Part shown: positions 3,001-62,543 of the stretch, in pieces
How positions within the stretch are numbered: position 1 is the first letter of the stretch
Layout of the letters: each line of letters opens with the position of its first letter
Source: Ruditapes philippinarum
Lineage: Eukaryota
Length of the DNA stretch: 64,000 bases
Direction: 5' to 3'
Assembly (NCBI RefSeq): GCF_026571515.1
Contig: NW_026858894.1
Span: 1-64,000 of the forward strand
Notes under the pieces: generated by a model
Seen by the model: the letters and a program-made list of their open reading frames with translations, nothing else
Database searches by the model: none
Told to the model about the DNA's origin: nothing
Program-made: the position numbers and the translations under genes

Positions 3001-3292
3001 TTACTAATAAGCGGCCATGCCTAAGGTAAACCATACGCCAGTAAATAATGCATTATAAAAAAAAAAAGATCTTTGTAAAACAATCTTGTCGTGGAGAAAC
3101 ACCGGCAACCGTTGTCGCTAATTTGATATAAGAAATACAGTTATTCAACGTTTTACAATAATTATCCAACACAAAATACACAATGGGAGTACAATATAAG
3201 TTTTAAAAGGGCTTTGGTATGTATTCATTAGTTGCATTGTCTCAATAAATAGTTTATTATCGTTATAATCGTTGTTAAAATGTGTGAAATCA

Positions 3293-6200: not shown

Positions 6201-7988
6201 AAAGATCATGATAAGTATAGAAACAGTATTGAAACAGTCTATACGTATGCATTTATGAAGAAAGATCACGGAAAAACTTAAAATCAAAAGGAACATGACG
6301 GCCCAAATCGCTTAACCACTCCATGAAAAAGAACAATTGAAATAACTTTCATTGTTCTTATACAGTATCATCTGGTCATCGTAATCTTTAAACATTTGTC
6401 TCAGGAGAAGATGCCATTAAAAGCATAGTTTTAGCCTTTGCCCTAGACGATATCTCGTTCAGACATGATTAATTATTTGATTTTTCTTTTATAAAATGGT
6501 TGGGGATTATATAATCTATTCAACAGAGCATGACTACTATCAATGAGTTTAAAAACACAACAAAAGTATAAAAGTGGATTATGAAGCGAAATTGCTAAAA
6601 TGTTTTGCAATCTTTTGTTTTAGCCATTTTAAAATTTTCCCACCAGATCGGGTCAATACACACGCAAGTTGTTGTTTGTTGAATAATATATCTTAGGAAT
6701 TGTTTCTTTGCATGTCATTAACAATTACATTTACGAAAGTATGTAATGGGTTTAGCTATCATTCCACAAAAAAGCAAAAGTTCTTCTTTATTGAGTTAAA
6801 CGACGTTTCCTATCATAGAGTATTCATCTTTCAGGAATGAATAGAAAAGGAAAATAAAACTAGCGAAAAGAACTAAATAATTGATAAAGTCTTAAATTAA
6901 ACAAATTCATAAAAAATGAAACTGATGATCACGGTCCTATGTTTTGCGTAATATTCACCAGATAGTGAGTCCTTTAACTCTTTTCGATCATCTCCAAGAG
7001 AAAATAACTTTAAATCAACCATACCGACATCTTATTTCATTTCAAATTATTCTTAGCCATTTATAGCTGTTACAATTCTATCCAACATAATTCTATTTTG
7101 ATTTGCTTTGTTTAGTAAACCCTCTGCAATATCTTCAAAAAAAGACGGAGAATTACTGAAATAAATCACTTTTCATATACAACTAAAGAATAATACATGC
7201 TTCAATAAATTTCAGCATATGTTTCTTCATGTCGTGGACTAAAGATATAAACACGAATTTGAAATCGAGTTAGATATTGCTTGTTACAGTTTTGAATTAT
7301 ATGCATGCTCAAGAAAATGGCCTTAAATCAGGCACAAACTCACGTTCAAGGACACATAACTCAAGAAGTAGGACCGAGACCCCTTTCTTTTATAAAAAGT
7401 AAATTGTTTCAATAATGAATGAAGTTCAGAACGTTCTGACTACTTGTTGTCCTTCTTTGCCTATGATAAAAGTAGAAAAAATAAGAAACGCCAATAAAGC
7501 TTCTGAAAAATGTTATGGCAGAAGATGGCGTTTCAAGTTTTTGTTTTTTTATAATTATTTTAAGTTCAGGTTTTATCATATTTTGCAGACCAGAAATATC
7601 GTAGCTAGTACAGGACCGTGCAAAATAATTCTTCTTGATTCTCTATCTGCTTTACTGTACAAATTGCTGGACTGATGTAGGCTACTTCTTATAAGACTTA
7701 CCTTAAGATTTTTTCCTTTTTCTTCACTATAGAACTTCATTTCAATTCTTAGGGGTTAGGGAGAAGATAACATTTCAATAGCATGATACAAGAGTGGAAT
7801 ATTTTCAGTATATTTGTAGAGAGTCATCTAAAGATTATTATCTGAAATTATTTTGTTTTATCCAGTTGCTCAAATAGTTTAGTGGATAAGTTATTTTATG
7901 TGGGATTTAACGTAGACGACGGATGAATGATTACGGACAAATGCCGGTCAAACTCAAACGATTATGCTACTGTATGGATGTTCATTTG

Positions 7989-8020
<32 letters not shown>

Positions 8021-8581
8021 ATATCAATATACAGTAATTAACTTATCATGCTATGTCAAACATATGTTACTCGTGTAGTCATGCAACTGCACTGAAACAA
8101 CACTTAACAATTGTAAGACGTCAAACTAAATGATCAAGTCACTCAACATGTCTAACAAATGTTTTATAAAGTGATTTAAGACGCAAACATTAATGGCATT
8201 ATCACTCAAAATGACAAACAAAACATTGTAAATTAAAGTCAAAGCTTCAATCCTTGTCATGTTAAATGATTCTGTTGCAACACATGCTGAGGCAGGCATT
8301 GTTTGATTACAACAACTGAACTTGCAAAAAGTGAAAATTTCAAAACTAAGTTTTATTAAATAAAGTGTATTTGAATATACATCATACGATAATACTAAAG
8401 AAAACAGGTACAAAGTCCCGGTATATATATATAAAAATAATTACGTAATGGAACATAACTATATAGGCCAATGCATGATACAACTTAAATCTTCTTAAAT
8501 TTATACATACAACGATGTCATCTCTATATAACACTTTATGTACACCAGGTTCATCATAAAAATTTCTTATTTATTTTATTT
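3293..8581 (+). repeat. Near-identical tandem duplication, two units of ~2.64 kb (3293-5928 and 5929-8581)
   Basis: AAAGAATTATGATAACTATTTATAAC starts both units (offset 2636). The units are colinear to TTCTTATTTATTTTATTTA, with scattered SNPs and small indels. The duplicated spurious ORFs (5473-5760 vs 8126-8413) agree. Confidence 0.95.
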
Positions 8582-8678
8582 ACGATTTAATTTTTAAAAG
8601 AATTTGATTTAATAACTACAAGAAGCATGAAATCTGTTAAAGAAACAGTGCAATTAAAAAGAAAAATTAAATTATCAG

Positions 8679-9551
8679 CTAGTTAGACCATAAATTGAAG
8701 TTTTTGAAACGTGCAAGCTTGTTGTCATGTCCAATTATAAAGTTGTTGTGTACTACAACGACGTGTTGGCGTTGCTTGTAATTTTGGTCCTGAAAGAACC
8801 GTTTTCCTGATGCAAACATATCTGGATCTAATATTTTCACACTTAGGTTCGAAAACTTCTGTATCAGTAATCTATTCAAAACGACTTGATCAACCTCTTT
8901 TTTATCTTGTCTCTCTAAAATCTGTTTCCATGCCAAAATTAACTTCCTTGATTTAGCGCTATTTTGTACAGCCATGAAACCTGGACATACATTGTTTTTA
9001 CCATCACTTTGAATCCATATATCATAGTCTCCTTCCAGATGCTGTAAAGGGTTTTGAAGCCAAACAGTATCTGCATCTGTATTGATAATATTTAATCCAA
9101 TATTTAACAGATCACTGATATATAATGACCGTCTTGATATTAAAGAATTGTATGGTTCAGAATTATACTTTACAGCCTTATCTATAGACGGAAGGTGAGA
9201 ATGGACAATATTTATTGCACCAGAATAATTCAGAATCAATTTGTCGTAAACATATTTATCTTCCGCAATGGCAATAACCGGTGCATTTATGCCAAGTTTT
9301 TGAAAATAAAAATGCCAATTTTGGAAAAAGTCATAAAAACCATTATTCACGGTGATCATTACTGTCCATTGATTGTGTGGTATTTTAAGTCCGTGGTTTC
9401 TAATATAGCTCGTCAAATTTGTTATTCCTGTTTTCAATATTTCCGTATCGTATGGTAATATAGTTTTTGTATTTAGATAAGTGGAAAGAAAAGCTATTCC
9501 AAGAATAAACATAAATGGTATGGCATGTTGTAAGTATAGAAATATCTTCAT
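8679..9551 (-). CDS. Nucleotide-diphospho-sugar transferase (Nucleotid_trans / CAZy GT77-like; RGXT-type xylosyl/arabinosyl-transferase family), type II membrane, 290 aa, single coding exon
   Basis: First ATG at 9551 (the ORF-track start at 9563 is a TTG). N-terminal TM helix (IPFMFILGIAFLSTYL), DxD motif in TDADTVWLQNP, CPGFM, DQVVLN, and C-terminal VHNNFIIGHDNKLARFK..NLW, all typical of GT77. Stop TAG at 8679-8681. Confidence 0.88.
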   Translation of the reverse strand: MKIFLYLQHAIPFMFILGIAFLSTYLNTKTILPYDTEILKTGITNLTSYIRNHGLKIPHNQWTVMITVNNGFYDFFQNWHFYFQKLGINAPVIAIAEDKYVYDKLILNYSGAINIVHSHLPSIDKAVKYNSEPYNSLISRRSLYISDLLNIGLNIINTDADTVWLQNPLQHLEGDYDIWIQSDGKNNVCPGFMAVQNSAKSRKLILAWKQILERQDKKEVDQVVLNRLLIQKFSNLSVKILDPDMFASGKRFFQDQNYKQRQHVVVVHNNFIIGHDNKLARFKNFNLWSN

Positions 9552-10139
9552 TGTCGGAATCAAGATTAATTACTGATATGTTTTTACCTTCCTTAGCATT
9601 AATATTAATATTAAAGTACATATTGGTTATTCAAAATGTTTTACAAAAATATACAAGATTATATTCACGTTGGTATTGCGTTTGTCTTGGCTTAGCTAAA
9701 GACGTGGCAAAATATCAACAAATTGTAATAGATATAACTGTTTTAAATATATACATGAACATATTGTGTAAACATTTGGACGTGATGTCATTGTTAGATA
9801 TACAGAAGTTATTGTTTTACTATTTAGGTTTATATTTAAAGTAAATGTAATTACATAGAATTGTCGTCATTTTGACAGAACTTTAATAAACATGGTATTC
9901 TTATAGTTTGATATCTTCGAAGAAAAAAGGAAAATGTATTCATTTCTAATTTCTAATTCATCAATTAAAACTCTATAATCATTTTTATCCAAGAAATTCT
10001 CTTTTATAAGAAAACCAAAATAACACATTAATTCATTAAATATATATTTTAAAAATCAGATGAAGACCGATCTACCTTAACATTTGTGCCCTAGTATTCA
10101 GTTTTTCCATATGCGTTATTATTTAAATTATTTGTAATC

Positions 10140-10750
10140 AACATTAAATATAAGTTCAAAGTTGTAATACTGTCAGTTATTTTATGTATTTGTTGTTGAC
10201 GCTTGTACATTATAAATGGAAACTCATCTTGCATATTTTACTCACTTTTTGAATTCTGCATTCTATCAACGTTTGACAAAATCAGTCATGGCCTGCAAAA
10301 TTATTAGGTTGCCGATTTGATATTTCTTGAATTTTTTATTTTCAATATTTAATTATCATTTTAATATACGTGTACCTTTTTTGGAATACATTTGGACAGC
10401 TTCAAAGTATATGTTATCGAAGAACCAGTAACCAAACACCAGTCGGATCAAGTTATCGATGAAAAACAACAACAGTTAGTTAGTAGGCTTAATAGTTTTT
10501 TATAAAATAATAAAAAAATCTTCAAATTTCTGGGATTGACATACTTTGTTTCTTCGTGTAAGTCAACAAAAATCTTTTATGAACAGTGATACTCCACTAT
10601 TTGTAGAAAATGTTGACTGGAATCATTACTATAGAGGTTTTCAGAGAATATATTGCAAGTATTAGAATTGTAATATTAAACCAAACATTGGGTAATTTCC
10701 ATGTTTATTTTATGCATCAAAGGTAGATGACTTAGACGAAAGTAAACATA
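10140..10750 (+). pseudogene. Inverted, degenerate paralogous copy of the 5' part of the CHST15-like locus (40370-41110)
   Basis: TATTTGTTGTTGACGCTTGTACATTATA, GAATACATTT..AGCTTCAAAGTA, TCGTGTAAGTCAACA and CATCAAAGGTAGATGACTTAGA all occur in the same order in the reverse complement of 40370-41110. Confidence 0.75.
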
Positions 10751-11161
10751 TATATTTTCATTTAATGTACTCAAATTTCTCAACGCTCTTATTATTTATT
10801 TGCTAACGGATAATCGAACTGATTTTATGTCAGCCAATTATCTATTGAATAAAGTTCTCAAATATGGATAAATTGTTCATTTCAAAACATAAAGGGTGTA
10901 TACTTTTAGAAATGCAATTTTGTTACAAAACCTCTTTCCATTTCTTAAAGATTTCAAATGGCCTTGCTGGATCGAGAATAATATTTATGATTCAAAACTA
11001 GTGTGAGATGTTTATCATATTTCTATCTGGAAGGAATGCTAAAATGCAGGACATGGCATTTAATACGCAACTAAATAAGTTTTTTATTGATGTTCAGATA
11101 TTCCTTTTAAAATATACACGACGAACACATAAAAGTATGTATATAAAAAAAGAAAATTATC

Positions 11162-11240
11162 AGGCTCAGTTTTATTGAGCCTGTTCATGGACAGTACTGG
11201 AAGTACAAGCTACCGTCCACGACCCATAGTATCTGGCTTA
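11162..11240 (+). repeat. ~80-bp double-hairpin interspersed element, copy 1 (other copies at 55011-55090 + and ~39735-39805 -)
   Basis: AGGCTC-N9-GAGCCT followed by TGGAC(A/G)GTA...TACCGTCCA and ending GGCTTAA. Three recognisable copies in the window. Confidence 0.75.
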
Positions 11241-12805
11241 ATTTTAACATAACTATGGTGAGAATTGAATTAAGAAAAATCCGCAAATGTGTTCATACGG
11301 CGGTTATTATGGTCGAACGGCGAATTCCAGTTTTACTTGTGGATGAAGACCTCAGGTGCTTAAACAATATAACGAGACCAAGTTGATTGGAGATTTTAAA
11401 AATATCTATTTGACCATTTTCATATACAATATTTTATATTATGTTTCAAGAAATAACGGTCAACACATAAATATTTATTCGAGTACTTAATTGACTTTGC
11501 ATAGTTGTCATAGAAAAAGTAATGCATTGTAGATGTAAACGATGGTACACCTCAGTATTATCTTAGATATTATCAGCATATTTTTTTATTAGTATTTGCA
11601 TCAAATCAAAATGTTCTTTCTATCTGGCTTCTTTAATATATTATTATTATCTGGACGTGCATCAAAATTGGAGGCTCATGTAAGCTACATTACTTTAGTA
11701 TTTATTATGATAGTTACGCTTATTAAAGGCATAGTCATTTGATAGTTGTGAATTTTAACGTAATATTTGTTTCTATAATCAATCTAATTTGTCCATGTCA
11801 GTTGAAAACACATAACCGGTAAAGAAAATATGAATAAAAATTAAAACAAGAAACATAATGTCAGATACATAAGCAATGCATTACAGTTGTTTAAACAAGC
11901 ATGCTTTTTGAATAATGCCAACAATGAAGACTTAAATTACATTCTGTACCTTTTGAAAAGTGTTATCAAAACAATATGATATTGAATAAAGACAATACAA
12001 ATGAAGTAAACTCTTCGGGCAATCTTTATTACATACTTTGATTAAATCATTCAGTTGTTTACAATTTTGTATATTTGCGTTTTGAATTTCTTGACAAAAT
12101 TATGCGAACTAAATGATGTAAGGGGAAATATGTACTACACACACTTCATTGCAATTTCTTTTCTATGATTGTTGAATTGAATAAAGTATTGTCTTGAATT
12201 GGGAAATTGAATAAAGTGACAGGATAAATTTAAATTTGGATTGAAATGTAACATATCAACTACTGATCTCAAATTTCTGTTGCATATCAAAGTAAGTAGG
12301 TATATTTAAGGCGTGTTGTATTCACATTTCCATAAGTTGGTTTAAAACTCGTGCAAAATGACAGCAAACACTTTTAATATTATTATAGCTATTTTTACTG
12401 CGTGGTATTAGTAAGTATGACTTGTTATCATTTGTATTTCTTTCTCTGCCTGTTTTCTTAGATTGTCGTTAAAATCATTGAAACATTTTTTTATTAAACT
12501 GTCCGCAAACATTTGTAAACATTTTGGGATTTGTAATGTAAACAATAACAAGTATTTAATAAAAGGTTATACTCAAACTTGGCTTTTTGTGTGGGTCTGT
12601 ATTGTCTCCATAAACTTGTAACTAACACTCTATTGAATGGATGCTTTATTATCATGTTTAAATCAATGTGTGTTTAAGTGGTTCATGTTTATTTATGCCA
12701 TTACGTTTAATAAGTATTTCTATTTTTACATTACGTATATACTTTATCATAAATTACACTATAGATAGGGTGTTTTATAAATTATAGTAAACAATATTTA
12801 AAGCA

Positions 12806-19307: not shown

Positions 19308-22300
19308 ATGGTTCAAGACACTAACAGAGGAGTTCAGTCGAGAACTAAAACACGAATAAAAGTGAATCGGCTTTTCTTTGTGATTGGACTATTAGTATTA
19401 GTATGTATTTTTGATGTTGTTCATCAACGTAAAACGTTTATGGTAAGTTTAGATGCACTTCGTGTGTACAGTTTTCCATACATAAAATCACGTTACTTTT
19501 TTCGTTTGAATAATTCAAAATTTGTGTTGTTACTCTTTACAGGGTTTTTATTCAGAAGTAAACGGAGAAAAAGATGTAAATGTTGGAAATGACAAAACAT
19601 TATACGAATTTCAATAAATTATAAAATAACAATAAATCTTTCGAGACAGAAACAAAGACTCTTGCTGAAAATATTAAGAAAATGCGATACATTTACCAAT
19701 TAGCGCTTTTCCAAAAAGTTAAAATTCAAAAATTAAGAACTATCGTTAGTAAACATGTAAGGACAGGCGGCGAAAACATATACTATAATTATTATCTTAT
19801 CAGTTGATAAGTATTATCAATGTCGTATTCAGATGCAGATGAAAAGTAACAAAAGTAGATGTGAAAAGGTGATCGACGAAATGAATTTATTTCAAATACC
19901 TGATGAGGACATCATAGACAAAATGGACAACAATGCTTTGTATTTATTGTTTGACACGTGAGTATTGTTCAGTTTTATTGATAAGCTTTAAATGAACAAT
20001 ATTACAAGAATTAAACCAGTCGATACCCGTTCAGTCCTGCTTTCTAATATATTAATATATTATATAATGTTTCTTCGAACGAATTATTAACACTATACGA
20101 GTATGCACGTATGTATGCATGTTTTTATTCTAGTCATTGGCATTGTCGAAATGTCGAAAATTTACTTCCTCTTATTATCATCGTTATACTGTTTTACACA
20201 ATGCAGTTGATAAAGTATTGATTTATAACAATACAACTTTTTTTGTTTAAAAAATGATATTGTGCATTTAAACCTTTTGACAGTAACTCATTTCAAATTT
20301 GGATTTATGAATAATAAAGTGGCATTATGTCCATACAAGTATTTACAGTAATTTAATAAGTAAAAGTTAAATAACTTGATATTTTGCCATAATTGTACTA
20401 TGAGATAAAATCAATAATCAATAATCCGTGTGACCAAGGCATTTTCTTATATTTCGTTAATATAGTTAGCAAGATATATTAATAATTGTTACAGCATTTA
20501 AAATTCCTTTTTAAAAACTACATTGCTTAACTTTTAAAGTTTTTGTAGCTTTGAATTTATAAGCAATAGTATTTGAATCATTTGAAAAGATTGCAAAGGA
20601 TATCCGTTTTAGGATTTAAGTTGTGTTAAACTTCTATTTTTAAAAGCTGTGATTCAGTTGTATGTAGTAAAACACAAAAACTTACTTGTATTATATCCGT
20701 TGAAATCAATACAATATGTATGTGTGTCACAAGGTATGTTAATCTACAACAATACCACTGCTGCAATTTAACCAGACAAGGTCCGAAACAGTCATCAGGA
20801 AAAAATATATGTGAAGATTATTTTTTCAAACCAGGATCAAAATGCATAGTTTACTCTTTTGGGTAGGTTGTTTCTAATTTGATGAGTGTTTTATCTAGAT
20901 TACTTGTTTAAGCCTTTGTAAATTATATCAAAATTTAAAAAAATGTATTAATTCTGTTTTAAAGCTTTCAATAATGCATGCAATATTTTTGTTTTCATTC
21001 AGCATCATTAGATAGAAACATATTTTCTAATGAATCAGAAATCAAGATTAAACAGTTTCTGACAAATAAAAGTATTAGATTGATCTGAAAGAACCATTAT
21101 TTTGTTTTCTCGGAAACTAGAACATTGCAAGTAAATAAATCTAAATTAATAAATATTTTAATTCCTGTTCTCGATAAATTAAAGGTCCCAGTTAAATTTC
21201 GACTTCGAAGAAAGTATCTGGAGATCTTTCAAGTGTGAAATCCACACGTTTGATCCAAGGTTTGTTACGTTATTTGAATCTTTAATAATTTACTTTTTTC
21301 ACACTGAATAAAAAACACTTTTCTTATACGAGTACGTATTGGAAGCTCGACAACATCTATTTGAGGTAATATAAATATAAAAATATAAATATCTGGGTTG
21401 TGTTTCACTGAGAGTCCTAAGTCTAGAAACGGTCTTAAGACAAAAACCGATTCAGTTTTGTTTTTCAAAGAAAGATTTCCTCCTTACGTATGACTCTTAT
21501 GAAACTACTTGTTCAATTTCTTGATAGCCCTGTAGATAAGCATGACGAGATTGTGGGTTAAAGTTTATGTCATTTTACCTCTTATCATTTCTCAGGGGAA
21601 TGGAATTGGTTAATGTTCAAGTCTTTGACTAAAGATCAAATATTTGTTAAAAGGTCTCGAGTTATTTCTAATTTACCAATTAGTCCTCGGACTTATGATA
21701 CAATTAGGTCTTTGTCTTTATATGAAACGCAGCCCTGATCACTAAGTGTATTAAGTATTATTGATAGATTCCTATGTTTAAGATATATCTTAACATCTGT
21801 TAAACATGAAGATTTTATTAAACAGTTTAATATAATTAAACAGGGCAGAGTGTCTAAGTGTCGTTTTAAGTCATGCTTTTGTCATGTTTCAGAGTAAGGT
21901 AGCAATTTATAAACGCATCAATTTTAGACATAATATCTTAGATATGACAAACTAATATAGAAAATATAGAAAGTTATTTAATCTTATTCATTCAGCATGC
22001 CAGTTGAGGGGAAGACATTACCAACGTTTATAGATTATCATCTAATTGGTCTGTCCGGGAAAAATTTTATTCAAACGGAACCAGAAAAATGGAGACACCA
22101 CGATAATCCTTTGCTGAAAACATGGAAAATGCAAACCCTTTCATCAATCATGGACACGCTTAACCATTCAGTAGTACGTAATGCATACTTGATACTGTGG
22201 GGTGTTTCTATAGTTTTAAAGATAATCACATGACTCATTAACTGAACGTGACATTTTGTAAAATATTCGATTTTGTAGCTTCCTTTATAACTTATAAATC

Positions 22301-22806
22301 TGTAAAGGAGAAGTTTAAGAGATCATATAATATTCTCCTTGATTTAGAAAAATATATGTACGTAGTCTGTCAAGTTTAATGTGCCAAAATCATAGTTGTC
22401 TTGTACATTTTTTGTTGTTTTAAATTCTAATGTCATGTATTTTACTATATTGCAGACGACAATTGACATTTTGAAAATAGACATTGAAGGATGGGAATGG
22501 AACGCACTCCCTGATATGATAAAGACAGACATTCTACGTCATGTGAAACAACTCTGTATTGAACTTCACTTTGGATATAGCTTCAAGTATCAAACAACAA
22601 ATGGACGTATTAAACCAGTTTTTACTAAAAATACGTGGGGAAATGTTCCAATAAAGAATCAAATAAAGCTTTTGAAGCAGTTATTCAATAACAGCTTTCG
22701 AATAGTAAGAAATGAACCATTGAATTGGGGGACAATAAAAATTGAAAACAAGGTTATAAGAATTCTAAATGAATAAACACTTATAAATCTAAGATTTTTG
22801 CCCTGA
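19308..22806 (+). pseudogene. METTL24-like (Methyltransf_22) type II membrane methyltransferase, disrupted; exons 19308-19442, 19543-19756, 19833-19957, 20734-20862, 21185-21259, 21996-22173, 22456-22806
   Basis: All introns are GT-AG and phase-compatible. TM helix LFFVIGLLVLVCIF. Family motifs KNICED..CIVYSFG, CEIHTFDPS, IDILKIDIEGWEW, VKQLCIELH. Exon 2 (214 nt) has a frameshift and stop. An in-frame TAA at 22774-22776 precedes TLINLRFLP-TGA. Confidence 0.8.
21396..21734. mobile_element. MITE with imperfect TIRs and CTG target-site duplication (PIF/Harbinger-like), inside a METTL24-like intron
   Basis: CTG|GGTTGTGTTTCA ... TGAAACGCAGCC|CTG. Confidence 0.6.
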
Positions 22807-37420: not shown

Positions 37421-40400
37421 TCTACCATTTAGAAACGTACTGTTTGTGGTTTAAAACTTTTTTCTTACCAAGAGCCAAGATTGCTGTCATTATTTCCTCC
37501 GTTGAATTTTCTGTAAAATGCAAGGATAGTAATGGTATTATCTTTTTGTATTTAATGCTGTTGTTGTTTTTGCTGCTGCTGTTGCTGCTTTTTTAATATC
37601 CAAATTTCAGTGAAAAATGAAAACAATTTATCTCTGATAAAATGGTTTTTAAGTTTATGCTTTAATTTTCTTCATACTTGCAATTAATATTCATGAACAA
37701 TCGTTCTACGTAACCGATTCTACAAAACTCCTAAAGACATCTGCAACAACAGCTTGGCATATTCGTAGAAAAGTTTTCTGTTTTACGGAATATGCACTTG
37801 AATCTCGTGGGAAAGACACTAAAGTAAATCTTCTACGGTACACGGGTATATGAAACTTCAAGCCCTTACTCCCTTGACAAAAAATTTGCATGATGTAAGA
37901 CAAATTGAACAATCGTATTATCTTTATTATACCCAACATTGTATATCCCCGGACAAAATTCCCAAAATCTAGAAACAATTTACGTAGAAAGCTTCATATT
38001 GTGTTGTATGAAGATGTGTGTGCAAGAACAATATAACATTATATTTCAAAACTATGATAAAGCATATAACTTAACCTCGGCTGACATAAAAATATGAGCA
38101 GTATTGGAGGCAATGCCTCTTTAAACAATACCAATCGTCTCTGTACTGGCGGCTTTGATCTTGCGGAAAATCACTAACTTTGCCCCATTCCCAAAATAAG
38201 TATTTCTGACTAAATCGTTTCTATGGATAAAATTCTGAAACAATGAAATATATTTTCCTACAACGTAAATGTTGTCTATTACTGTTAAAAAATGTCATCG
38301 CTTTAGTACAGGTTTTGTTATGTGGTTTGTTATTTATTTAAATATATTATAAAAATGTTACTTCATTTGTTCTCGCACAATCCTGCACTTGTAGATTATA
38401 TAAATTTAAAAAAAGATGAACCTTTTCACTGATTCTTAACAAGAATATGATCTTTGAAGTTTGGGTTCAGTTTAAATATGACATCAGCAAGAGTAAACTG
38501 TGGGTTTGATCCCTTCTGACGGCAGTCAATTTATTAACATTTTTCTGTTGTCCCAATACGTGCCAGCTGAAAACCTTAAAAAGACAAAAAATTTCACGAA
38601 AAAAAAAAGTTTTTTCAAATTTTTTATCTTTCAGATTTAACTTAATTAAAAAAAATCATATAAAACTAAGCAAAAATTCTGCAATAACGTATTCATAATT
38701 CTCATATTTCATTTCAAAATGGGTTTTACAGTATAAAGAAGATTGTACAATAAAAATTTATTAAATGAAACACGTTGACTTTCAGAACACTTGTCCGTCA
38801 GCCTACTGTTTTATTTATTTCGGAGAGCTGCATTATGTTACAAAAGGGAAATATCTTACATACACAAACTGATGAAAATATATAGTGCAAACTTAGATGA
38901 CACTAAAGACCTGATATAAACAGCGTTTCGAGAGACATTGTATAATAGATGCACAGTTTCCCCCCATTATTCTTCACCCAAGTTAAACACATGATATTTT
39001 CAAAAATCCAAATCCGAATTGTCTGTCTATATCTTTTAATTGGATGGCACTATCTTGAAATGAAATAAAAAGACCTGTTAACCTCAGTCAAAAATGAACA
39101 AACATTTAACGATAACTTTAATGCTAGTTACAATGTTACGTACCAAAAATTCCGTTGTAGCTTCCATCCGCCTGTTTTGATTTCAGAACATCTTCCTTTA
39201 CTGAACTGTCGTAGAATTGAATATAACTTGATAGTTATCTATATTTACCTGTAAAACTCAATATTATGTATTCGGTAATGTACATAGCGTTAAAGACATT
39301 TTATATTAATTCAAAATTGAAATAAAGTGTGCATTATATGTAGCCAATCCGAATCCTATAATGTTATTTACAGTTCCGCAGTTAAAAAACAAAATGATAT
39401 GTTTTTACTGTTTCCACCAGAGAGATGAATCGTTTTCTACATATTATTGTTAAGAATTGACTACATCTTCACCCTTGGTTCGAATTCCGTCAGCGACTTT
39501 TGATTATTTCATGTATGGAGTATATCTACAAAACGCAACGTCGGAAATTCATTCCTCTCTCAGGTGTCAGCTCGTGCCTGATAAAATTCCCGAAGGGCAC
39601 ATGAGTTTTAATCCACAAATAAAGATGCAAAGTCGTCATATAACCTCTTCATTATCGGTGCGGCCATGATAACACATTTGCGGGTGCTTCTTGTATTAAC
39701 TGTCATCATTGTCATGTTTGGTCTTGGATTCTGCTTACGCTGGAGCATAGGGGCGTAGACGGTAGTTTTCAATACCTTCCATAACAGGCTCGTTCGTTTT
39801 AGGCATTCTTAGGGATTTTTTTATTATTCAAAAACAGACACATATATTTGACTTATTATGAAACAAAACAAAAGTCTTATTTGTTCCTCAGGTACTAGTA
39901 TATTGTAGAAGAAATATCTAAATATCAAATTAAAACAAACTTGTATTTACTAGATGTCGTTACCGTTAATGTTAAACCGTCTCCTCGAAAACCAATGTGT
40001 TTCTTTTTTAGATTTATTAGAAATTGATGGGTGATAGGTGATTCTACTGAAAAAGTCTGTTGTCCCGCATTTTGGCATTCCTACCAGATAGAAATACGGT
40101 AAACATCTCACCCGCGTGGCCGAATCGAACGTATTCCTTTCGATCCAGCAAGGGCATTTGAAATCTTTAAGTAAAGGCGGAAGTTTCTGCAAACAAAATA
40201 CAAATTTAATATATAACACACTTTAAGCTTTGTAATGAATTTTTTCTTCAAATGTTAATACTCTATTCAACAGAATAGATAAAATGGTTGACATAGGGTC
40301 ATCATGATCATTCTTTAGCAAATGAATGAATAATACAACGAAAAAGGTAGATCAATACGTAAAGACTCTATTTAATTTCTTCTAAGTCATCTACCTTTGA

Positions 40401-49094: not shown

Positions 49095-50547
49095 CGAGGG
49101 GTGTCCCAGAATTACGTGGACTTTTGCTGTAACTCAAAAACTACTGAAAATAAAAACAAACAAAATTAACATGAACAAAATGCAACTTTATTGCATTAGT
49201 ACAAAAAATTTCAAAGTTGTCCGGCAACTGGATCAGTGTCTGTGGGCAAGGTAATGAGACAATGGGTAGCGGGTGCGGGGCAGTTCATTCCGACGTTACG
49301 ACGTCATTCCGGTGGCGTCGCTAGTTGTTAATAAATGCGTGGCGTCGAATGTCAGTTTTTCTCAACATAGTCGCCGCCTAACTCAATACACCTATGGTGT
49401 CGATATATCCACTGGTCGTACACCGCCCTGTATAATAATAATAAAGCATACTATTAACTTTTGTTACGATAATAGTGTTAAAGACGACGGTGNNNNNNNN
49501 NNNNNNNNNNNNNNNNNNNNNNNNNNNNNNNNNNNNNNNNNNNNNNNNNNNNNNNNNNNNNNNNNNNNNNNNNNNNNNNNNNNNNNNNNNNNNNNNNNNN
49601 NNNNNNNNNNNNNNNNNNNNNNNNNNNNNNNNNNNNNNNNNNNNNNNNNNNNNNNNNNNNNNNNNNNNNNNNNNNNNNNNNNNNNNNNNNNNNNNNNNNN
49701 NNNNAGACAATGTGCATTCACAAGGGAAATAACCTATCATGCGCACTGCTTACTATAATAGCAGTTTGAGTTCACTTTCTTAAAAGCTGAAGCGGATAAA
49801 TTGCGTTTAAAATAATAAATTGTGATTAGCTTAATTTTTAAAAATCATTTTTTTAGACACAAAATTATTGCTTACTCTTGAATAGTACTCAGCATTGCAA
49901 CGCCTGTCCCGATCTATGACGTCCTTGACTTCCTAATATTGACGCCGCAGTCAACGTTGACTTTCTCCCACGACCCTTGTCGTCTTCAATATCCTCCCGG
50001 CCGTCTCGAAAACGCTTATGCCACTTGAAAACGAGTGATCGACAAACAGGAGGTCTCACTTTTGCAGTCTCCAACATTTCCTGCGTCTGTGTTGGCGTCT
50101 TCCCAAGATTAACACAAAACTTGATGATAGTCCGATGTTCCGCGTAGTCCGTGGACGTCATTTTTTGTTAAATATCCAAGAGCAACGGTTGTTAGTTGTC
50201 CGCTGGTAAACAATAATGGAAACAGCTATGACGTCAAAATTTCAATCGAACGTTCATATGACGTCACTGCATATTCTTACGACGTCGCGCCATTTTTTAC
50301 GTATAAATACGCAAGATATACGAAAGTAAAGACAACTTATTAATACAAAATATTGGACTGCCCCGCCCTGCGCATACTGCGTTACTATAGCGACGTAAAA
50401 TATAGAGAAGCAATGTTAGAAATTTAGAAATAATGGACATATTCATTAAGGATATGTTAAAGGTATTGTGTACAAATTTGCTAAAAAAATGCATTGAAAA
50501 ATAAAAAAGTTATAGCAAAAGTCCACGTTATTCTGGGACACCCCTCG
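49095..50547 (-). mobile_element. Mariner-family DNA transposon (internally deleted, contains N-gap 49493-49704)
   Basis: TA|CGAGGGGTGTCCCAGAATTACGTGGACTTTTGCT ... AGCAAAAGTCCACGTTATTCTGGGACACCCCTCG|TA. Confidence 0.92.
49889..50161 (-). pseudogene. Truncated mariner (Mos1-type HTH) transposase N-terminus
   Basis: EHRTIIKFCVNLGKTPTQTQEML..VFKWHKRFRDGREDIEDDKGRGRKST. No catalytic DDD domain follows. Confidence 0.88.
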
Positions 50548-54379: not shown

Positions 54380-55479
54380 CGAGGGTGCTTCAAAACGTAA
54401 TGTTTCTTTTTATATGTGTTTCCTTACTTAAAACTAACGTGTTGGTTGAATAATTCTATTCAGGTATGTAGTCTGATCACAAGCACGAAATCAAAGTACA
54501 TATTGCTTCAAAATAATAAAGATATTCACTTGTATATGTGTGTGACAGTTTGCAGATTTGTTAAAACATTTCAAGCTGGTATATCAAGCATTAAAGATGC
54601 AGGTCGAAAAGGTCGCCCAAACACTCATGTTACCAGAAAGAATGTGTCTTCGGTTGAGGTACTTGAAGAAGAAGATGGGCGATACACAGTGGAAGAGATA
54701 GCCAGTAAGGTAGAACTCTCAAATAGAATAGGAGCGCTCATATTCTGACCCAAAATTTGGGAATAAAAAGATATGTACTCGCTGATTCCCCCAATCACTG
54801 ATCAGAAAAACAGCGCAATAAAGTTTTGTAAACATTTTTCTTTAATTGTTCCGGTACAGTGGTACAAACAACTTCAAAGAAAGAAACAGCTATTACTGGG
54901 TAGTTCATAAAGTGTAGAACAACATAGAATATATACTAAAAAAATGCTCCAAAATAGAGAAAGCAAGAATCCCTAAAGAAAGTCCAACACAACATGATTG
55001 AAAATGTTGCAGGCTCGGTTTAATTGAGCCTGTTCATGGACGGTACTGTAATGTGCAAACTACCGTCCACGCCCCCTAGCACCGGCTTAAGCAGAAGTCA
55101 ACATTTAAAATGAAATGAAAACCCATAAAAGTTTAATTGTCGTAGACTTTCTGATCAAACAAAAAGGTAATATCTTAAACCACCTTCCCTACTCTACTGA
55201 TTCAAGTTCACGTTATTTTTTTTTTCCGGCGGCTCAAAAAAGATCTTTTTGGGCGGAGATATAATAACAGGAGTGCACTTTGGGGCGCAGTGCATCATTG
55301 TCTAACATTGATACCAAGGAAAACAACTATGGGGCTTTTAAGCCATGGATTTTTAGATAAACAAAGTAAATTTCGGTTAAGGGGGCAGATTTCGAAGGGT
55401 TCAAATAAATCATTTTGTGGCACTATTAGCTGTCTTCAATTTTATTTATCAAGAAACATTACCTTTTGAAGCACCCTTG
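54380..55479 (+). mobile_element. Degenerate mariner transposon with transposase relics
   Basis: TA|CGAGGGTGCTTCAAAACGTAATGTTTCTT ... AAGAAACATTACCTTTTGAAGCACCCTTG. Relic peptides FQAGISSIKDAGRKGRP..EDGRYTVEEIA and HLPYSTD (cf. the mariner YSPDLAP motif) at ~55180. Confidence 0.85.
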
Positions 55480-58720: not shown

Positions 58721-59773
58721 GTATGAACGTGCCGGCGATATGCATAACTAAGGATGGGTATCAAACCAGCTAACTAATTAATCACGAAGGGGCTCATGGG
58801 GTCACCGTAAGTAAAGCTCGGACGTCTAAAAATAAAATGTCTTAAAACGTTACCAATTAGTCAACCGGACTATTTTATTCACTTTTCATTCAAAACCTTA
58901 TCTTCTTAATGCAAACTTGAAATTTCTTTGCGTAAATTAGTTTAAGCATTTATATATAGATTTATTGATATATTCAACCCCTTTTCCCATCGGCAACATT
59001 ACATAACAGTATATCGAATCAGTTTAAAATAAACAAAATCAATTTAAAGAAGACAGGGGAAACAAAACAAATATTACATTACACATTTTCTAATATTCAA
59101 ACTTCGAATTATGATACCAAGTACTTAAATGATTTATTGTAAGGGAAACATGACAAGCTTTTTTTAAAATGTTAGTTTTTTTCACATACTTTGTCCATAT
59201 GTCCTGATAGCTGAAATTATGCCGGTACACTAAAACAACTTTGATATATTACTTTTTTATCGATAAATAAGCTATCCTAATAATGAGTATACACTTTGAT
59301 ATATAAAACAGATCTAGCATTAAGTCAAAGACTTTAAGACAACTTACTGTATATCTTACTAAATGTAAAAAGAACACATTTAGCTGAATGCATTATCTAA
59401 AACATATTAAAATTTCTCTGATTCATTGCATCACAATTTAAACAATTACATCCTCTTGCAGTGTGTTTAACATGAGATGGTTTCTTTTCAATAATTCAAC
59501 AGTATGTACAATATTGTTAGTTATAATTTTTAAAGAGGCCTTAACGCGAAAATAGCCTAAATGATAAGGATTACTAGTTGATATGCTGTACCAAGGCTAG
59601 TGAATGTAAAATTTAGCTGTTATGGAACACGTAGCAATTCATTATATATCGATTAATAGGTATTATTAAAAACTACCCTCTAACTTTTCTTCTCGTAACA
59701 TCAGTAAAATAAAAACAAGTGATTTTTATTATTTTATGTTTTCTATCTAGGATAGGATTTCAAAGGTGGAAAT

Positions 59774-61772
59774 ATGAGACTGTATACCGTTAGTTATGTA
59801 GCTAGTACGAGCGTTCTAATTTACCTCGTTTATTTTATATACAAGAACCAGTCTTTGCAATTCTTTGACAAACGTTTCAGCCATAGAAACACACCTGATG
59901 ATAAAACTGAAGTTGTATGGCAAGGTGTATTTCCACATGACCGGACACATGTTGTGCATGCAGAAAATATCAAACCTCTGACTTTATCAATAAAAAGAAA
60001 CAGCTCGTTTGATTACAAAGCTGCCATGACGAAACTGAACGAAGCGAGGGTTAGACAGGACGACCCACGATTAATAAAGTTGATAAGGGATTACTACATT
60101 GAACCGCCATCAAAAACACCATATAACCTCACGAATCCTGAACAATTAGAATTCTCAAACGGACAAACGCCATTTGTTGACAGCAGGCTAAATTATATGG
60201 TAAGACAAATTAGTTGAAATTTCAAGATTTCTTATGTAAAGTTTTCCCCTGTTAGCCTCTGCGACTGAATGCAACTAAGAAATGACTGAATTAAAAGGCA
60301 TTTGCATTCTCAAATTCTGCAGTTAAGGTTGTCTATTATACCTGAAACTTTACTATGTGCACCATTTTCCATTCTCAACAAATTCGGCTGATATTCTCTG
60401 CTTAACCGAAAACAATTGTTCCGAATCTTGCAAATACTCTTTAAAGTAGAATTTCTCCGGATGCATGTTCATTTCATTAAGACTTCAAATTTTAGATTTT
60501 TGTATTTGAAATTGAAATGTATTCACACATTGCAAACGGCACATACAAGCCACGTTAGGTACTAAAAATAGGTAAAATATGCAAGAATAGCCCTTAATGC
60601 GATAGTCATGTAGATAAATTATGTTGAAAAATACCAAAACCAGTCACTTATCGCAAATATAAATATTATAATGTTATACTAAAATATCTGGAGTCATGCA
60701 ACATTCCAAATGCAGCTGCTTTACAATATATTTAATTGAAACCACTTTAATGATAAAATTAAAAATATTTAAGGCTCTCCTTTTTTACTGACGATGTGGG
60801 ACATCAGCAAATTGAGAACGCGTCACTTAAATATAAAAAATGTATACAATTGGTGTCAATTTAAATATAATCTAACACTCAAATGCCGACTTTCCAGTTT
60901 TTAATTATTCATAGAAATATAGCAGTTATGAACACGATATAATTGACCAAAAAAGATGAATAGTAAGATATATGATTTATCGCAATGTAAATTCCTTAAC
61001 AAATTATTCTTCAGGAGGGTGGATTTTACATTGAATGTGGAGCTTTGACTGGGGAAAAAGGATCAAACACCCTCTTTCTTGAAAAAGTACGGAAATGGAA
61101 TGGTTTACTTATAGAGGCAGATCCAGAAAACTTTAAAGTTTTAAAGACTAAGAACAGAAAGGCCTTTACTATGCACGCTTGTTTGAATACAAAACCATAC
61201 CCAGCAGTGGTAGGTACTTTTCACTACATGATGCAAACAAAACTTGACAATAAGAAATCCGTTATTACATAAAAGGCGCTGATTAAGATCCACTTTTAGT
61301 CTAACATTAGAAAGTATCATGTTTTGTGCTCTCACATAAAAATGATAACCATGTATTTATTTCATAATTCCTTTAGATGACGTTTAACAAAGCTTTTAAC
61401 AGAGGCCGAGTCGTCCACAATCAAGAAGCCAAGAATTGGATCAAGAGACATAATATCACAAAAGATGAAGTTCTGGTCCAGTGCTTCCCCCTCTATTCAA
61501 TCCTCCTAGCTTTAGGTCAGGTGAACGTTGATTTTTTAAGTCTAGATGTAGAAGGAGATGAGTTAAATGTTCTGAAGACCATTCCATGGGATAAAGTTTA
61601 TATGAAGATGTTGACAGTTGAGTATGTTCATGAAATAGGTTCATCGGGTGAGTTAAAGAAATATGTAGAAAAACAAGGGTACGATTCACTGTTGCAAGTG
61701 TCAAAAGGTGGCGGAGGTGTTAACGATATCATTTTTAGAAAGAAAGGGCTGACACATAAATATATCATTTGA
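59774..61772 (+). CDS. FkbM / Methyltransf_21 family (Drosophila Star-like) type II membrane methyltransferase, 338 aa; exons 59774-60199, 61015-61209, 61377-61772
   Basis: TM helix VSYVASTSVLIYLVYFIY. Motifs QDDPRLIKLIR, FSNGQ, SAM-binding loop GGFYIECGALTGE..SNTLFLEK..WNGLLIEADP, VQCFPLYSILLAL, DFLSLDVEGDELNVLKTIPW, LTVEY. Two phase-0 GT-AG introns and an intact frame. Confidence 0.9.
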
Positions 61773-62543
61773 AAATGTGTGTAAATCAATTTCATTTGTA
61801 TAGGCCAAACAAAATTAGCAAAGTTGTTGCATAATAATGTAATGGACATTGTGATGAATATTTTAAAGCTTATGTTGGTTGAAGGAATAATTTGTAAAAT
61901 ATTTGACATCATAATTGTGTGTGCATGGAATATTCTTTTGAATATTGACACATGTAAAGGTAAAAGTCAAGTTGGGAAACCAGCCATGTGACGGTAGAGG
62001 ATATATTTCTAAATATACAGTTTAATAAAACATTAACAAGTTCAGCTAAGCAATTATTGTTGAAAATATGATAGATAAAAATTATTATCTATTAAAGGTT
62101 GATTGACATTGTCTGACGGAAAATGGTGTCGGATGTACCTTTTTCGGTACTATGTTTTAGTACAAACAATCTAATTATATTTTGATATGATACTGCTTTT
62201 AGTCAAATCGTTTTCTTATTACAAATTGTCTGAAAACAAACAAATCTCTTAAAACGTTTAACATTCAAGAACGAAAGCATCACATTTCCTTCGGATGTCT
62301 ATTAGACTTTCTGACGAAGAGTTAAGATATCCATGGCATTCAAGAACAAACAAAAAAATGTTTTTAAATCAACAAGACTTAGTGTTTTTTAGTGTTTACC
62401 ACAGCAAGATATTTAATTGTATTTCAAGAAGTCGTTTTGGTTAATCGTTAAATAAAAACATTTGGGATCCTTTTACAGGACTGTACTTTATCGCATTTTA
62501 TCTTTTTAACAAACATGTCATGCAGCGCGTCAAACCATTATGT

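What the first reader, a model, noticed from the sequence alone, without database searches (positions are those of the whole stretch)
59774..61772. Star-like FkbM protein as a candidate for the unidentified molluscan glycan O-methyltransferase
Seen: an intact type II membrane FkbM-family gene embedded among glycosyl- and sulfotransferases, with SAM loop IECGALTGE (Thr where I recall Asp as usual). Established: bacterial FkbM-family members such as rhizobial NoeI O-methylate fucose. O-methyl sugars are common in mollusc glycans, and to my knowledge the enzymes are not identified. These animal proteins are normally annotated only as 'Star-like'. Inference: this is a lumenal sugar O-methyltransferase.
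Basis: partly seen in the sequence, partly recalled or inferred. Interest (0 to 1): 0.8.

Follow-up and report, generated by a model that had tools for sequence, protein, structure and literature searches.

The report
Clam Star-like FkbM methyltransferase gene
This is an intact, expressed Manila clam gene for a membrane-anchored methyltransferase-like protein of the animal "Star-like" family; it is a reasonable but unproven, and far from unique, candidate for the still unidentified enzymes that put methyl groups on mollusc sugars.

Summary
Window 59774-61772 (+) carries a three-exon gene (59774-60199, 61015-61209, 61377-61772). A spliced transcript contig confirms the splicing. The 338-aa product is letter for letter the NCBI protein "protein Star-like isoform X1 [Ruditapes philippinarum]". 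It has a 3-residue cytosolic tail, one N-terminal membrane helix, a disordered stem and a confidently modelled class I methyltransferase domain (Pfam Methyltransf_21/FkbM, 47 bits). Every near-invariant family residue is present, and these residues are shared with bacterial relatives. dN/dS against in-genome paralogs is 0.05-0.15.

The Thr in IECGALTGE is real and rare: Asp 80%, Asn 16%, Thr 2% in the family. The gene's own bivalve clade and all four close paralogs carry Asn, not Asp. From memory, Thr is the usual residue at this position of the general SAM motif I, so it is probably harmless.

The sugar O-methyltransferase reading is only partly supported.
- The gene is one of at least 16-29 paralogs.
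- Two other lumenal methyltransferase families occur in this genome.
- The family also occurs in bees, crustaceans and a brittle star, and no nematode or flatworm member was listed.
- No substrate evidence exists.

The scan noted the same idea for a paralog elsewhere in this genome. It is a new member of a known kind, of moderate interest.

The parts
59586..59773 (+). 5' untranslated region (minimum extent)
   Evidence: Contig record 1 of run X1 covers 59586-60199 without a break.
59774..60199 (+). Exon 1, residues 1-142: cytosolic MRL, membrane helix about 4-24, disordered stem about 28-60, then the N-terminal helical part of the lumenal domain (DDPRLIKLIRDYYIEPPS, GQTPFVDS)
   Evidence: 100% match to P0179 residues 1-142; AF2 helix 3-25 and pLDDT under 50 at 28-52; donor GT at 60200.
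60200..61014 (+). Intron 1 (GT..AG)
   Evidence: Joint 60198/61014 in contigs of X1 and X2.
61015..61209 (+). Exon 2, residues 143-207: strand beta-1, the SAM loop, strand beta-2 ending in Glu176, Arg190 and Cys198. NCBI isoform X2 (P0203) skips this exon.
   Evidence: 100% match to P0179 residues 143-207; Pfam profile positions 1-45; secondary structure.
61030..61056 (+). Motif I, IECGALTGE (Ile148-Glu156). The Thr154 codon ACT lies at 61048-61050.
   Evidence: Sequence; position statistics D 210, N 43, T 5; all four close paralogs read GALNGE.
61210..61376 (+). Intron 2 (GT..AG), retained in one X1 contig
   Evidence: Joint 61208/61376 in X2; X1 record 5 runs 61060-61405 through the intron.
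61377..61772 (+). Exon 3, residues 208-338 plus stop: the rest of the methyltransferase domain, with Cys243 and the hallmark VDFLSLDVEGDE
   Evidence: PF05050 E 1e-8, profile positions 90-172; 100% match to P0179 residues 208-338.
61545..61562 (+). Asp264-Val-Glu266-Gly267-Asp-Glu269, the acidic motif at the end of strand beta-4 and the presumed active site
   Evidence: Invariant or near-invariant across animals and bacterial relatives; strand 257-263 in the model.
61773..62300 (+). 3' untranslated region (minimum extent; contigs run on beyond the laid stretch)
   Evidence: X1 record 6 and X2 record 8 cover 61376-62300 and run over the end.

Best explanation
The gene encodes a type II membrane protein of the secretory pathway whose lumenal domain is an active SAM-dependent methyltransferase of the 'Star-like' branch of the FkbM family. 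The proposed mechanism has four parts.
1. A 3-residue cytosolic tail and a signal-anchor helix (about 4-24) place a flexible stem and the catalytic domain (about 61-338) in the ER/Golgi lumen.
2. SAM, supplied by an MFS_5 (SAMT-1/GoSAMT-type) transporter, binds at the loop Glu149-x-Gly151-Ala-Leu-Thr154-Gly155-Glu156 after strand beta-1, and at Glu176 at the end of beta-2.
3. The acidic cluster Asp264/Glu266/Glu269 after beta-4 positions or deprotonates the acceptor.
4. The acceptor I consider most likely is a hydroxyl group of a glycan or glycoconjugate passing through the Golgi. This gene would then be one specificity variant in a large, old paralog family.

Shown here: gene structure, expression, family membership, fold, residue conservation and purifying selection. 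Inferred: topology, SAM binding, catalysis and, most weakly, the sugar acceptor.
For: - Gene and transcript.
- Family: PF05050 at 47.1 bits over the whole profile.
- Fold: AF2 model with pLDDT 90 and pTM 0.82, a membrane helix, a disordered stem and a Rossmann-type domain. Fold search finds class I methyltransferases. The only solved FkbM entry, 2py6, scores Z 12.2, rmsd 2.4 A, 163 residues aligned, 20% identity.
- Conservation: all near-invariant residues of 124 relatives are present (E149, G151, G155, E156, S159, N160, E165, W170, G172, E176, R190, C198, C243, D259, S262, D264, E266, G267, E269). The same constellation is invariant in bacterial relatives without a membrane anchor, which argues for retained chemistry rather than a pseudo-enzyme.
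- Selection: dN/dS of 0.05-0.15 against four in-genome paralogs, and 0.06-0.08 in exons 2-3.
- Lumenal signs: 4 N-glycosylation sequons and two near-invariant Cys. 169 of 202 full-length-like relatives have an N-terminal hydrophobic segment.
- SAM supply: MFS_5 genes are present in this genome. The C. elegans orthologue SAMT1 has been proposed as a Golgi SAM transporter needed for methylated glycans (preprint 10.1101/2021.07.06.451061).
- Sugar link: a bacterial relative in Stieleria lies between a Wzx flippase, GT4 glycosyltransferases and an acyltransferase. 45 of 80 bacterial loci have a GT2, GT4 or Wzx-like ORF within 6 kb. NoeI methylates Nod-factor fucose. The same PANTHER family (PTHR34009) is expanded together with carbohydrate sulfotransferases in Alvinella (PMC12403961). 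Transferase genes lie in the same window.
Against: - There is no biochemical or genetic evidence for any substrate.
- The family is widespread where O-methylated N-glycans are not reported: Apis and other Hymenoptera, hemimetabolous insects, crustaceans and a brittle star. No nematode or flatworm member appeared in the listed hits. Those lists are truncated at 120 rows.
- At least 16-29 paralogs plus two other candidate families dilute any claim for this one gene.
- The bacterial neighbourhood count has no background control, includes many related Rhodobacteraceae, and shows no decay with distance. Two other bacterial loci that I annotated did not look like polysaccharide clusters: one held no glycan gene and the other only a single GT2.
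- The nearest Pfam-supported transferase gene in the window is about 28 kb away.
- The protein scores below the TIGR01444 cut-off (31.7 against 37.7 bits).
- The founding family member, Drosophila Star, is known as a cargo chaperone, not an enzyme (my own knowledge).
Confidence: 0.38

Rival explanations
1. It is an active lumenal SAM-dependent methyltransferase, but the acceptor is not a sugar hydroxyl. Candidates are a protein side chain, a lipid, a secreted small molecule, or an amine such as the aminoethylphosphonate or phosphoethanolamine substituents of invertebrate glycans.
For: All the evidence for an active enzyme applies equally. FkbM itself methylates a macrolide hydroxyl, not a sugar (my own knowledge). 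The family occurs in insects, crustaceans and an echinoderm, which suggests a substrate more widespread than O-methyl sugars. Methylaminoethylphosphonate occurs on gastropod N-glycans (PMC6935376). The Paramylibacter relative (L055) sits next to an aminotransferase, a flavin monooxygenase and another methyltransferase, which looks more like small-molecule metabolism.
Against: No candidate substrate is indicated by any data here. The co-expansion with carbohydrate-modifying enzymes, the Stieleria polysaccharide cluster and the neighbouring transferase genes point towards glycans.
Confidence: 0.3
2. It is a non-catalytic Star-like cargo receptor or chaperone. Like Drosophila Star, it would escort a membrane-bound ligand out of the ER, with the methyltransferase fold serving only as a binding scaffold.
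For: NCBI names it 'protein Star-like'. PANTHER groups this Pfam domain under PTHR34009 'PROTEIN STAR' (PMC12403961). It has the same type II layout.
Against: SAM-loop and acidic residues are near-invariant across phyla and identical in soluble bacterial relatives. The cytosolic tail has only 3 residues, whereas Star has a long cytosolic region (my own knowledge). At least 16 paralogs is odd for a dedicated chaperone. I could not retrieve Drosophila Star itself to compare its motifs, because of the length limit and truncated lists.
Confidence: 0.12
3. It is a redundant paralog drifting towards loss of function. The unique Asn-to-Thr change in the SAM loop and the exon-2-skipping isoform would be early signs.
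For: Thr154 is unique among the close relatives and paralogs. Its branch is somewhat longer than those of its sister and of the Mercenaria orthologue (0.19 against 0.13 and 0.05). One close paralog, on C15341, has a stop in exon 2. NCBI isoform X2 lacks motif I.
Against: The reading frame is intact and the splice sites are canonical. Spliced transcripts appear in runs of several studies. dN/dS is about 0.1. All other conserved residues are kept. Thr is the consensus residue at this position of the general motif I, (V/I/L)(L/V)(D/E)(V/I)G(G/C)G(T/P)G (Kagan and Clarke 1994, from memory). No exon-2-skipped contig was seen in the runs laid.
Confidence: 0.05

Closest known systems
Drosophila Star and the animal 'protein Star' family (PANTHER PTHR34009, Pfam Methyltransf_21)
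   Same: Both are type II membrane proteins with a lumenal FkbM-like domain. NCBI names this very protein 'Star-like'. The family-to-Pfam link is documented in PMC12403961.
   Different: The cytosolic tail has 3 residues instead of a long cytosolic region. The gene is one of at least 16 paralogs. Nothing links it to EGF-ligand export. Star's motifs could not be compared here, because its sequence was not retrievable.
Bacterial FkbM-family methyltransferases (FkbM of FK506 synthesis; NoeI, the Nod-factor fucose 2-O-methylation gene; structure 2py6)
   Same: Both match the Pfam family above its threshold and have the class I fold, with 2py6 among the best structural matches. A bacterial subgroup shares the whole motif set, including the S-L-D-V-E-G-x-E variant.
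   Different: Identity is only 24-29%. The bacterial proteins are soluble, with no anchor or stem. The protein scores below the TIGR01444 cut-off. I did not align NoeI or FkbM themselves, because no sequence was available in the tools. That NoeI belongs to this Pfam family is from memory.
Other lumenal or membrane-anchored methyltransferase-like genes of the same genome: the METTL24-like gene (window about 19308-22806) and single-exon membrane-anchored FkbM genes (L013, L014)
   Same: They are predicted secretory-pathway class I methyltransferases with a PF05050 or PF13383 match, and are equally uncharacterized candidates for glycan methylation.
   Different: There is no detectable BLASTP similarity to P0179 (E 0.11). 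They carry the classical D-x-G-x-N-x-G loop rather than E-C-G-A-L-x-G-E, and have a different exon structure.

Membership tests
Pfam PF05050 Methyltransf_21 (FkbM domain) | Full-length match to the family profile above the gathering score | tested here: met
   47.1 bits against a 22.7 cut-off, E 3.8e-12, residues 149-310 covering profile positions 1-172. Exon by exon: exon 3 gives 35.9 bits and exon 2 gives 12.4 bits.
Pfam PF05050 Methyltransf_21 (FkbM domain) | Class I (Rossmann-like) SAM-methyltransferase fold | tested here: met
   AF2 model with pLDDT 90. VIA-align top hits are all class I methyltransferases at Z 11-13, and 2py6 (FkbM) scores Z 12.2, rmsd 2.4 A, 163 residues. The rows are tied, so this shows the fold, not the subfamily.
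Pfam PF05050 Methyltransf_21 (FkbM domain) | Glycine-rich SAM loop after beta-1, an acidic residue at the end of beta-2, and the D-x-E-G-x-E motif after beta-4 | tested here: met
   E149-C-G151-A-L-T-G155-E156, E176 and D264-V-E266-G267-D-E269 sit on strands 146-150, 171-175 and 257-263 of the model.
NCBIfam TIGR01444 fkbM_fam | Score above the curated cut-off | tested here: not met
   31.7 bits against a 37.7 cut-off, E 1.9e-7. It is related to, but not a member of, that mainly bacterial subfamily model.
Animal 'protein Star' family (PTHR34009) | Type II membrane protein with a lumenal FkbM-like domain that groups with proteins named Star or Star-like | tested here: met
   Identical to NCBI 'protein Star-like isoform X1'. 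In the tree it lies inside a bivalve clade of such proteins. Atlas neighbours are 'protein Star-like' clusters.
Animal 'protein Star' family (PTHR34009) | Function in ER export of EGF-type ligands; long cytosolic N-terminus as in Drosophila Star | not testable with these tools
   The function cannot be tested in silico. The tail here has 3 residues. Star's own sequence was not retrievable, so the comparison rests on memory.
Golgi glycan O-methyltransferase (functional class) | Catalytic domain faces the ER/Golgi lumen | tested here: inconclusive
   Predicted only: N-terminal helix 3-25, Arg2 on the short side, 4 sequons, and conserved Cys198 and Cys243. The best 19-residue hydropathy window scores 1.53, which is moderate. 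No signal-peptide or topology predictor was available.
Golgi glycan O-methyltransferase (functional class) | Methyl transfer from SAM to a sugar hydroxyl | not testable with these tools
   This needs an enzyme assay or glycomics after knock-down.
Golgi glycan O-methyltransferase (functional class) | Phyletic distribution follows that of methylated glycans (molluscs, nematodes, planaria) | tested here: inconclusive
   The family is present and expanded in bivalves and annelids. It is also present in Hymenoptera, Hemiptera, crustaceans, rotifers and a brittle star. No nematode or flatworm was listed. Lists are cut at 120 rows, and natural methyl groups are lost in standard permethylation analyses.
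Golgi glycan O-methyltransferase (functional class) | A route for SAM into the Golgi lumen exists in the organism | tested here: met
   PF05631 (MFS_5, the SAMT-1/GoSAMT family) matches at 242 bits on C1230, and there is a multi-exon copy on C12178. This is not discriminating, because humans also have MFSD5.

The most novel reading that the evidence does not exclude
The animal Star-like branch of the FkbM family, including this clam gene and its many paralogs, would be the long-sought set of Golgi glycan O-methyltransferases of invertebrates. Paralog expansion in molluscs and annelids would supply the different sugar and position specificities. Drosophila Star would be a derived, possibly non-catalytic offshoot of an enzyme family.
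Probability: 0.25. Interest if true: 0.8.

Novelty: new member of a known kind. Interest (0 to 1): 0.45.

Why it matters
O-methylated sugars are a hallmark of mollusc, nematode and planarian glycans and are targets of innate-immune lectins. No animal enzyme that makes them has been identified: PMC7614267 said so in 2023, and I found nothing later in the library.

This work turns a vague annotation ('Star-like') into a concrete, testable candidate set. It is a lumenal, conserved, selectively constrained methyltransferase family that shares its catalytic residues with bacterial relatives, some of which lie in polysaccharide clusters. It also tempers the claim: this gene is one of many paralogs, and the family's distribution does not match methylated glycans neatly. 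A positive assay on any member would open animal glycan methylation to genetics. A negative one would redirect attention to the METTL24-like and single-exon FkbM genes.

Tried and rejected
- Sequence searches of the PDB with exon 2, exon 3 and the family profile found no solved relative.
- Foldseek against the PDB gave only generic methyltransferases with low TM-scores. The VIA-align wide search was more useful.
- Retrieving Drosophila Star, nematode or flatworm relatives failed. The word search lists only the best 120 hits, and these were filled by arthropod and mollusc proteins of about 300 aa. The representative library carries no names.
- Literature searches for an identified animal glycan methyltransferase, or for a link between Star and methyltransferase activity, found none. 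The Staudacher 2012 and Wohlschlager 2014 papers are not held.
- The bacterial gene neighbourhood was mixed. Stieleria shows a clear polysaccharide cluster. Roseibium and Paramylibacter do not. The 45-of-80 count lacks a background and shows no distance decay.
- Small ORFs at 33-55 kb of the window gave no Pfam matches. The PKCGTT sulfotransferase-like motif at 39950-40219 is seen by eye only.
- The idea that Thr154 marks a dead enzyme was rejected on conservation, selection and the general motif I consensus.
- The joined three-exon sequence was never typed or submitted. Exons were searched separately, and the identical database protein P0179, returned, was used for the family scan, the alignment and the fold.
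Full report
**What is there**

ORF listing and the raw sequence give three coding pieces on the + strand joined by canonical GT..AG introns:
- 59774-60199, 142 codons, ending NYM|gtaaga.
- 61015-61209, 65 codons, beginning EGGFYIECGALTGE.
- 61377-61772, 131 codons plus stop.

Public runs were laid on 59200-62300. One 1805-nt contig of run X2 contains both joints, 60198/61014 and 61208/61376. A contig of X1 shows the first joint, and another X1 contig retains intron 2. Raw RNA-seq reads of X21 lie on exons 2-3. Fourteen runs from five studies hold about 0.1-0.43 of the sampled words, as expected if they hold exons only, against about 0.75 in runs that hold the whole stretch. The transcript reaches at least 59586 to 62300.

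**Identity**

Exon 3 alone matches Pfam Methyltransf_21 (E 1e-8) and exon 2 matches weakly.

A search of the 1.84-billion representative library with exon 3 gave 2222 relatives. The best full-length one, P0002, was then used for a word search. That search returned P0179, named 'protein Star-like isoform X1 [Ruditapes philippinarum]'. P0179 is 100% identical to the three exon translations in order: 1-142, 143-207 and 208-338.

The window is therefore Manila clam DNA, and the gene is already annotated, though only by resemblance. P0203 (isoform X2) skips exon 2. The full protein matches PF05050 at 47.1 bits over the entire profile. It falls below the TIGR01444 cut-off.

**Anatomy**

An AlphaFold2 model built on 124 relatives has pLDDT 90 and pTM 0.82. 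It shows:
- a helix at 3-25;
- a disordered stretch at 28-60;
- a globular domain at 61-338, with the strand and helix order of a class I methyltransferase.

A Foldseek-independent search of 48,161 chains returns class I methyltransferases at Z 11-13. The structural-genomics FkbM entry 2py6 scores Z 12.2, rmsd 2.4 A, 163 residues and 20% identity. That is the longest alignment, the lowest rmsd and the joint-highest identity among the first ten rows. The rows are tied, so this shows the fold only.

The family alignment has near-invariant E149, G151, G155, E156, S159, N160, E165, W170, G172, E176, R190, C198, C243, D259, S262, D264, E266, G267 and E269. The clam protein has all of them. On the model they fall where class I enzymes bind SAM (the loop after beta-1 and the acid after beta-2) and where they hold the acceptor (after beta-4).

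The protein has four N-x-S/T sequons and three Cys, two of them near-invariant. This fits a lumenal domain. The topology is inferred, not shown.

**The Thr**

Among 264 motif instances in the retrieved relatives the position is D 210, N 43 and T 5. However, every member of the gene's own bivalve clade, and all four close in-genome paralogs, read GALNGE. The change in this gene is Asn to Thr.

In the general motif I of SAM-dependent methyltransferases the residue before the last Gly is most often Thr or Pro (Kagan and Clarke consensus, from memory). I regard Thr154 as compatible with SAM binding.

**Family and selection**

The clam genome (1.4 Gb) holds at least 29 PF05050 matches and at least 16 exon-1 relatives. 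Many sit in tandem on the same contigs and share the three-exon plan.

A maximum-likelihood tree places the window's protein as follows:
- It is sister to a second Ruditapes paralog, P0164 (support 100/95).
- Next comes Mercenaria P0162 (100/99).
- Both lie inside a 21-member bivalve clade (97/94).
- Several other bivalve clades and an arthropod clade lie outside.

Exon-by-exon Nei-Gojobori estimates against four paralogs give dS of 1.0-1.4 and dN/dS of 0.05-0.15, falling to 0.06-0.08 in the catalytic exons. These are old duplicates kept under purifying selection. One paralog, on C15341, has a stop in exon 2.

**Relatives outside animals**

A scan of one genome per prokaryotic species found 501 relatives carrying the same [YF][FL]SLD[VI]EGxE word. 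Three of them, aligned with animal members, share every invariant residue, including the S-N pair, W-x-G, E-x-x-P and the upstream G-Q/D motif. They lack the anchor and stem. This is the strongest argument that the animal proteins keep an enzymatic function.

The gene neighbourhood of these relatives is mixed:
- In Stieleria the gene overlaps a Wzx flippase and is flanked by GT4 transferases, a sugar oxidoreductase, a second FkbM gene and an acyltransferase.
- In Paramylibacter and Roseibium the neighbours are unrelated or suggest small-molecule metabolism.
- 45 of 80 loci have a GT2, GT4 or Wzx-like ORF within 6 kb. There is no background control and no decay with distance.

**Does it methylate sugars?**

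In favour:
- lumenal placement;
- retained catalytic residues;
- a SAMT-1/GoSAMT-type transporter family in the genome;
- bacterial relatives in polysaccharide clusters;
- NoeI as a documented sugar-methylating precedent (that NoeI belongs to this Pfam family is from memory);
- co-expansion of PTHR34009 with carbohydrate sulfotransferases in Alvinella;
- transferase genes elsewhere in the window;
- an open literature gap.

Against, or unresolved:
- There are no substrate data.
- The nearest Pfam-supported transferase is about 28 kb away, and the flanks hold transposase fragments.
- There are many paralogs.
- Two other candidate families exist in the same genome. One is a single-exon membrane-anchored FkbM type with no BLASTP similarity to this protein. 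The other is a METTL24-like gene at about 19-23 kb of this window.
- The named distribution covers bivalves, crustaceans, hemi- and holometabolous insects (including Apis), springtails, annelids, rotifers and a brittle star. No nematode or flatworm was listed.
- Methylated N-glycans are reported from molluscs, planaria and nematodes. The same review warns that natural methyl groups are lost in standard permethylation, so absence in other phyla is weakly established.

**Verdict**

My estimates are:
- about 0.7 that this is an active lumenal methyltransferase;
- about 0.38 that its acceptor is a glycan or glycoconjugate hydroxyl;
- about 0.12 that it is a non-catalytic Star-type chaperone;
- about 0.05 that it is a decaying copy.

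It is a new member of a known kind (an annotated Star-like, FkbM-domain protein). Its value lies in the testable hypothesis, not in the sequence. The scan's notes show the same idea was raised for a paralog on another piece of this genome (s1-804115).

**Limits**
- No model coordinates were available to measure the Cys198-Cys243 distance or to dock SAM.
- The N runs at about 49.4-49.7 kb and 62.54-62.74 kb were left untouched.

Noticed in passing
window 22396-22776 (+): This ORF matches Methyltransf_21 (E 2.9e-5) and Methyltransf_22 (E 1.9e-4). It is part of a METTL24-like gene that the scan noted at 19308-22806, and is a second, unrelated lumenal methyltransferase candidate in the same window.
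   Followed up: partly
L013 (G000:C4322:63500-67000) 714-2069 and L014 (G000:C8867) 202-3096: These are single-exon genes with an N-terminal hydrophobic segment and a classical FkbM domain (DLGCNIG / DIGASFG; PF05050 at 31.5 bits for L013). They show no BLASTP similarity to the Star-like protein. L014 carries a long Q/N/E-rich repeat region before the domain.
   Followed up: partly
L099 (G000:C15341:42000-51999) about 8470-8634 (-): A close paralog of the window's gene has an in-frame stop in exon 2 (…ENYKI*DQKRKK…), and no exon 3 was found in the fetched stretch. It is probably a pseudogene within the family.
   Followed up: partly
P0001 (representative library hit, 3928 aa): The best hit of exon 3 is a 3928-residue predicted protein with 13 separate FkbM-type stretches. 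It is probably a tandem gene array merged by a gene caller, or else a true multi-domain protein.
   Followed up: no
window 61210-61376 and exon 2 (61015-61209): One X1 contig retains intron 2 (61060-61405). NCBI also lists an isoform, X2 (P0203), that skips the in-frame 195-nt exon 2 and so lacks the SAM loop. No skipped contig was seen in the runs laid.
   Followed up: partly
Literature: PMC9125321 (Ruditapes philippinarum, Vibrio challenge): A 'methyltransferase FkbM domain' gene is reported as up-regulated after Vibrio anguillarum infection, and the authors discuss it as DNA methylation. An FkbM-domain protein is unlikely to be a DNA methyltransferase. Which paralog it is remains unknown.
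   Followed up: no
window 49889-50161 (-) and 54416-54748 (+): These are weak Mos1/mariner-type HTH matches (HTH_48 at E 0.014, HTH_32): transposase remnants between the transferase genes and the Star-like gene.
   Followed up: partly
window 39950-40219 (-): The ORF contains GMPKCGTTDF, which resembles the PAPS-binding loop of carbohydrate sulfotransferases. It gave no Pfam match on its own and is probably one exon of a sulfotransferase gene.
   Followed up: partly
L039 (Stieleria magnilauensis NZ_CP036432.1) 458-12366: This planctomycete polysaccharide cluster holds two FkbM genes. One of them, of the Star-like motif type, overlaps the end of a Wzx flippase gene. The cluster also has GT4 genes, a heparinase II/III-like gene and an acyltransferase.
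   Followed up: partly
G000:C1230:71405-72295 (-) and G000:C12178:231188-244124 (-): Two MFS_5 (SAMT-1/GoSAMT/MFSD5 family) genes are present. One is apparently intronless (466-aa open frame, 242 bits) and one is multi-exon.
   Followed up: no
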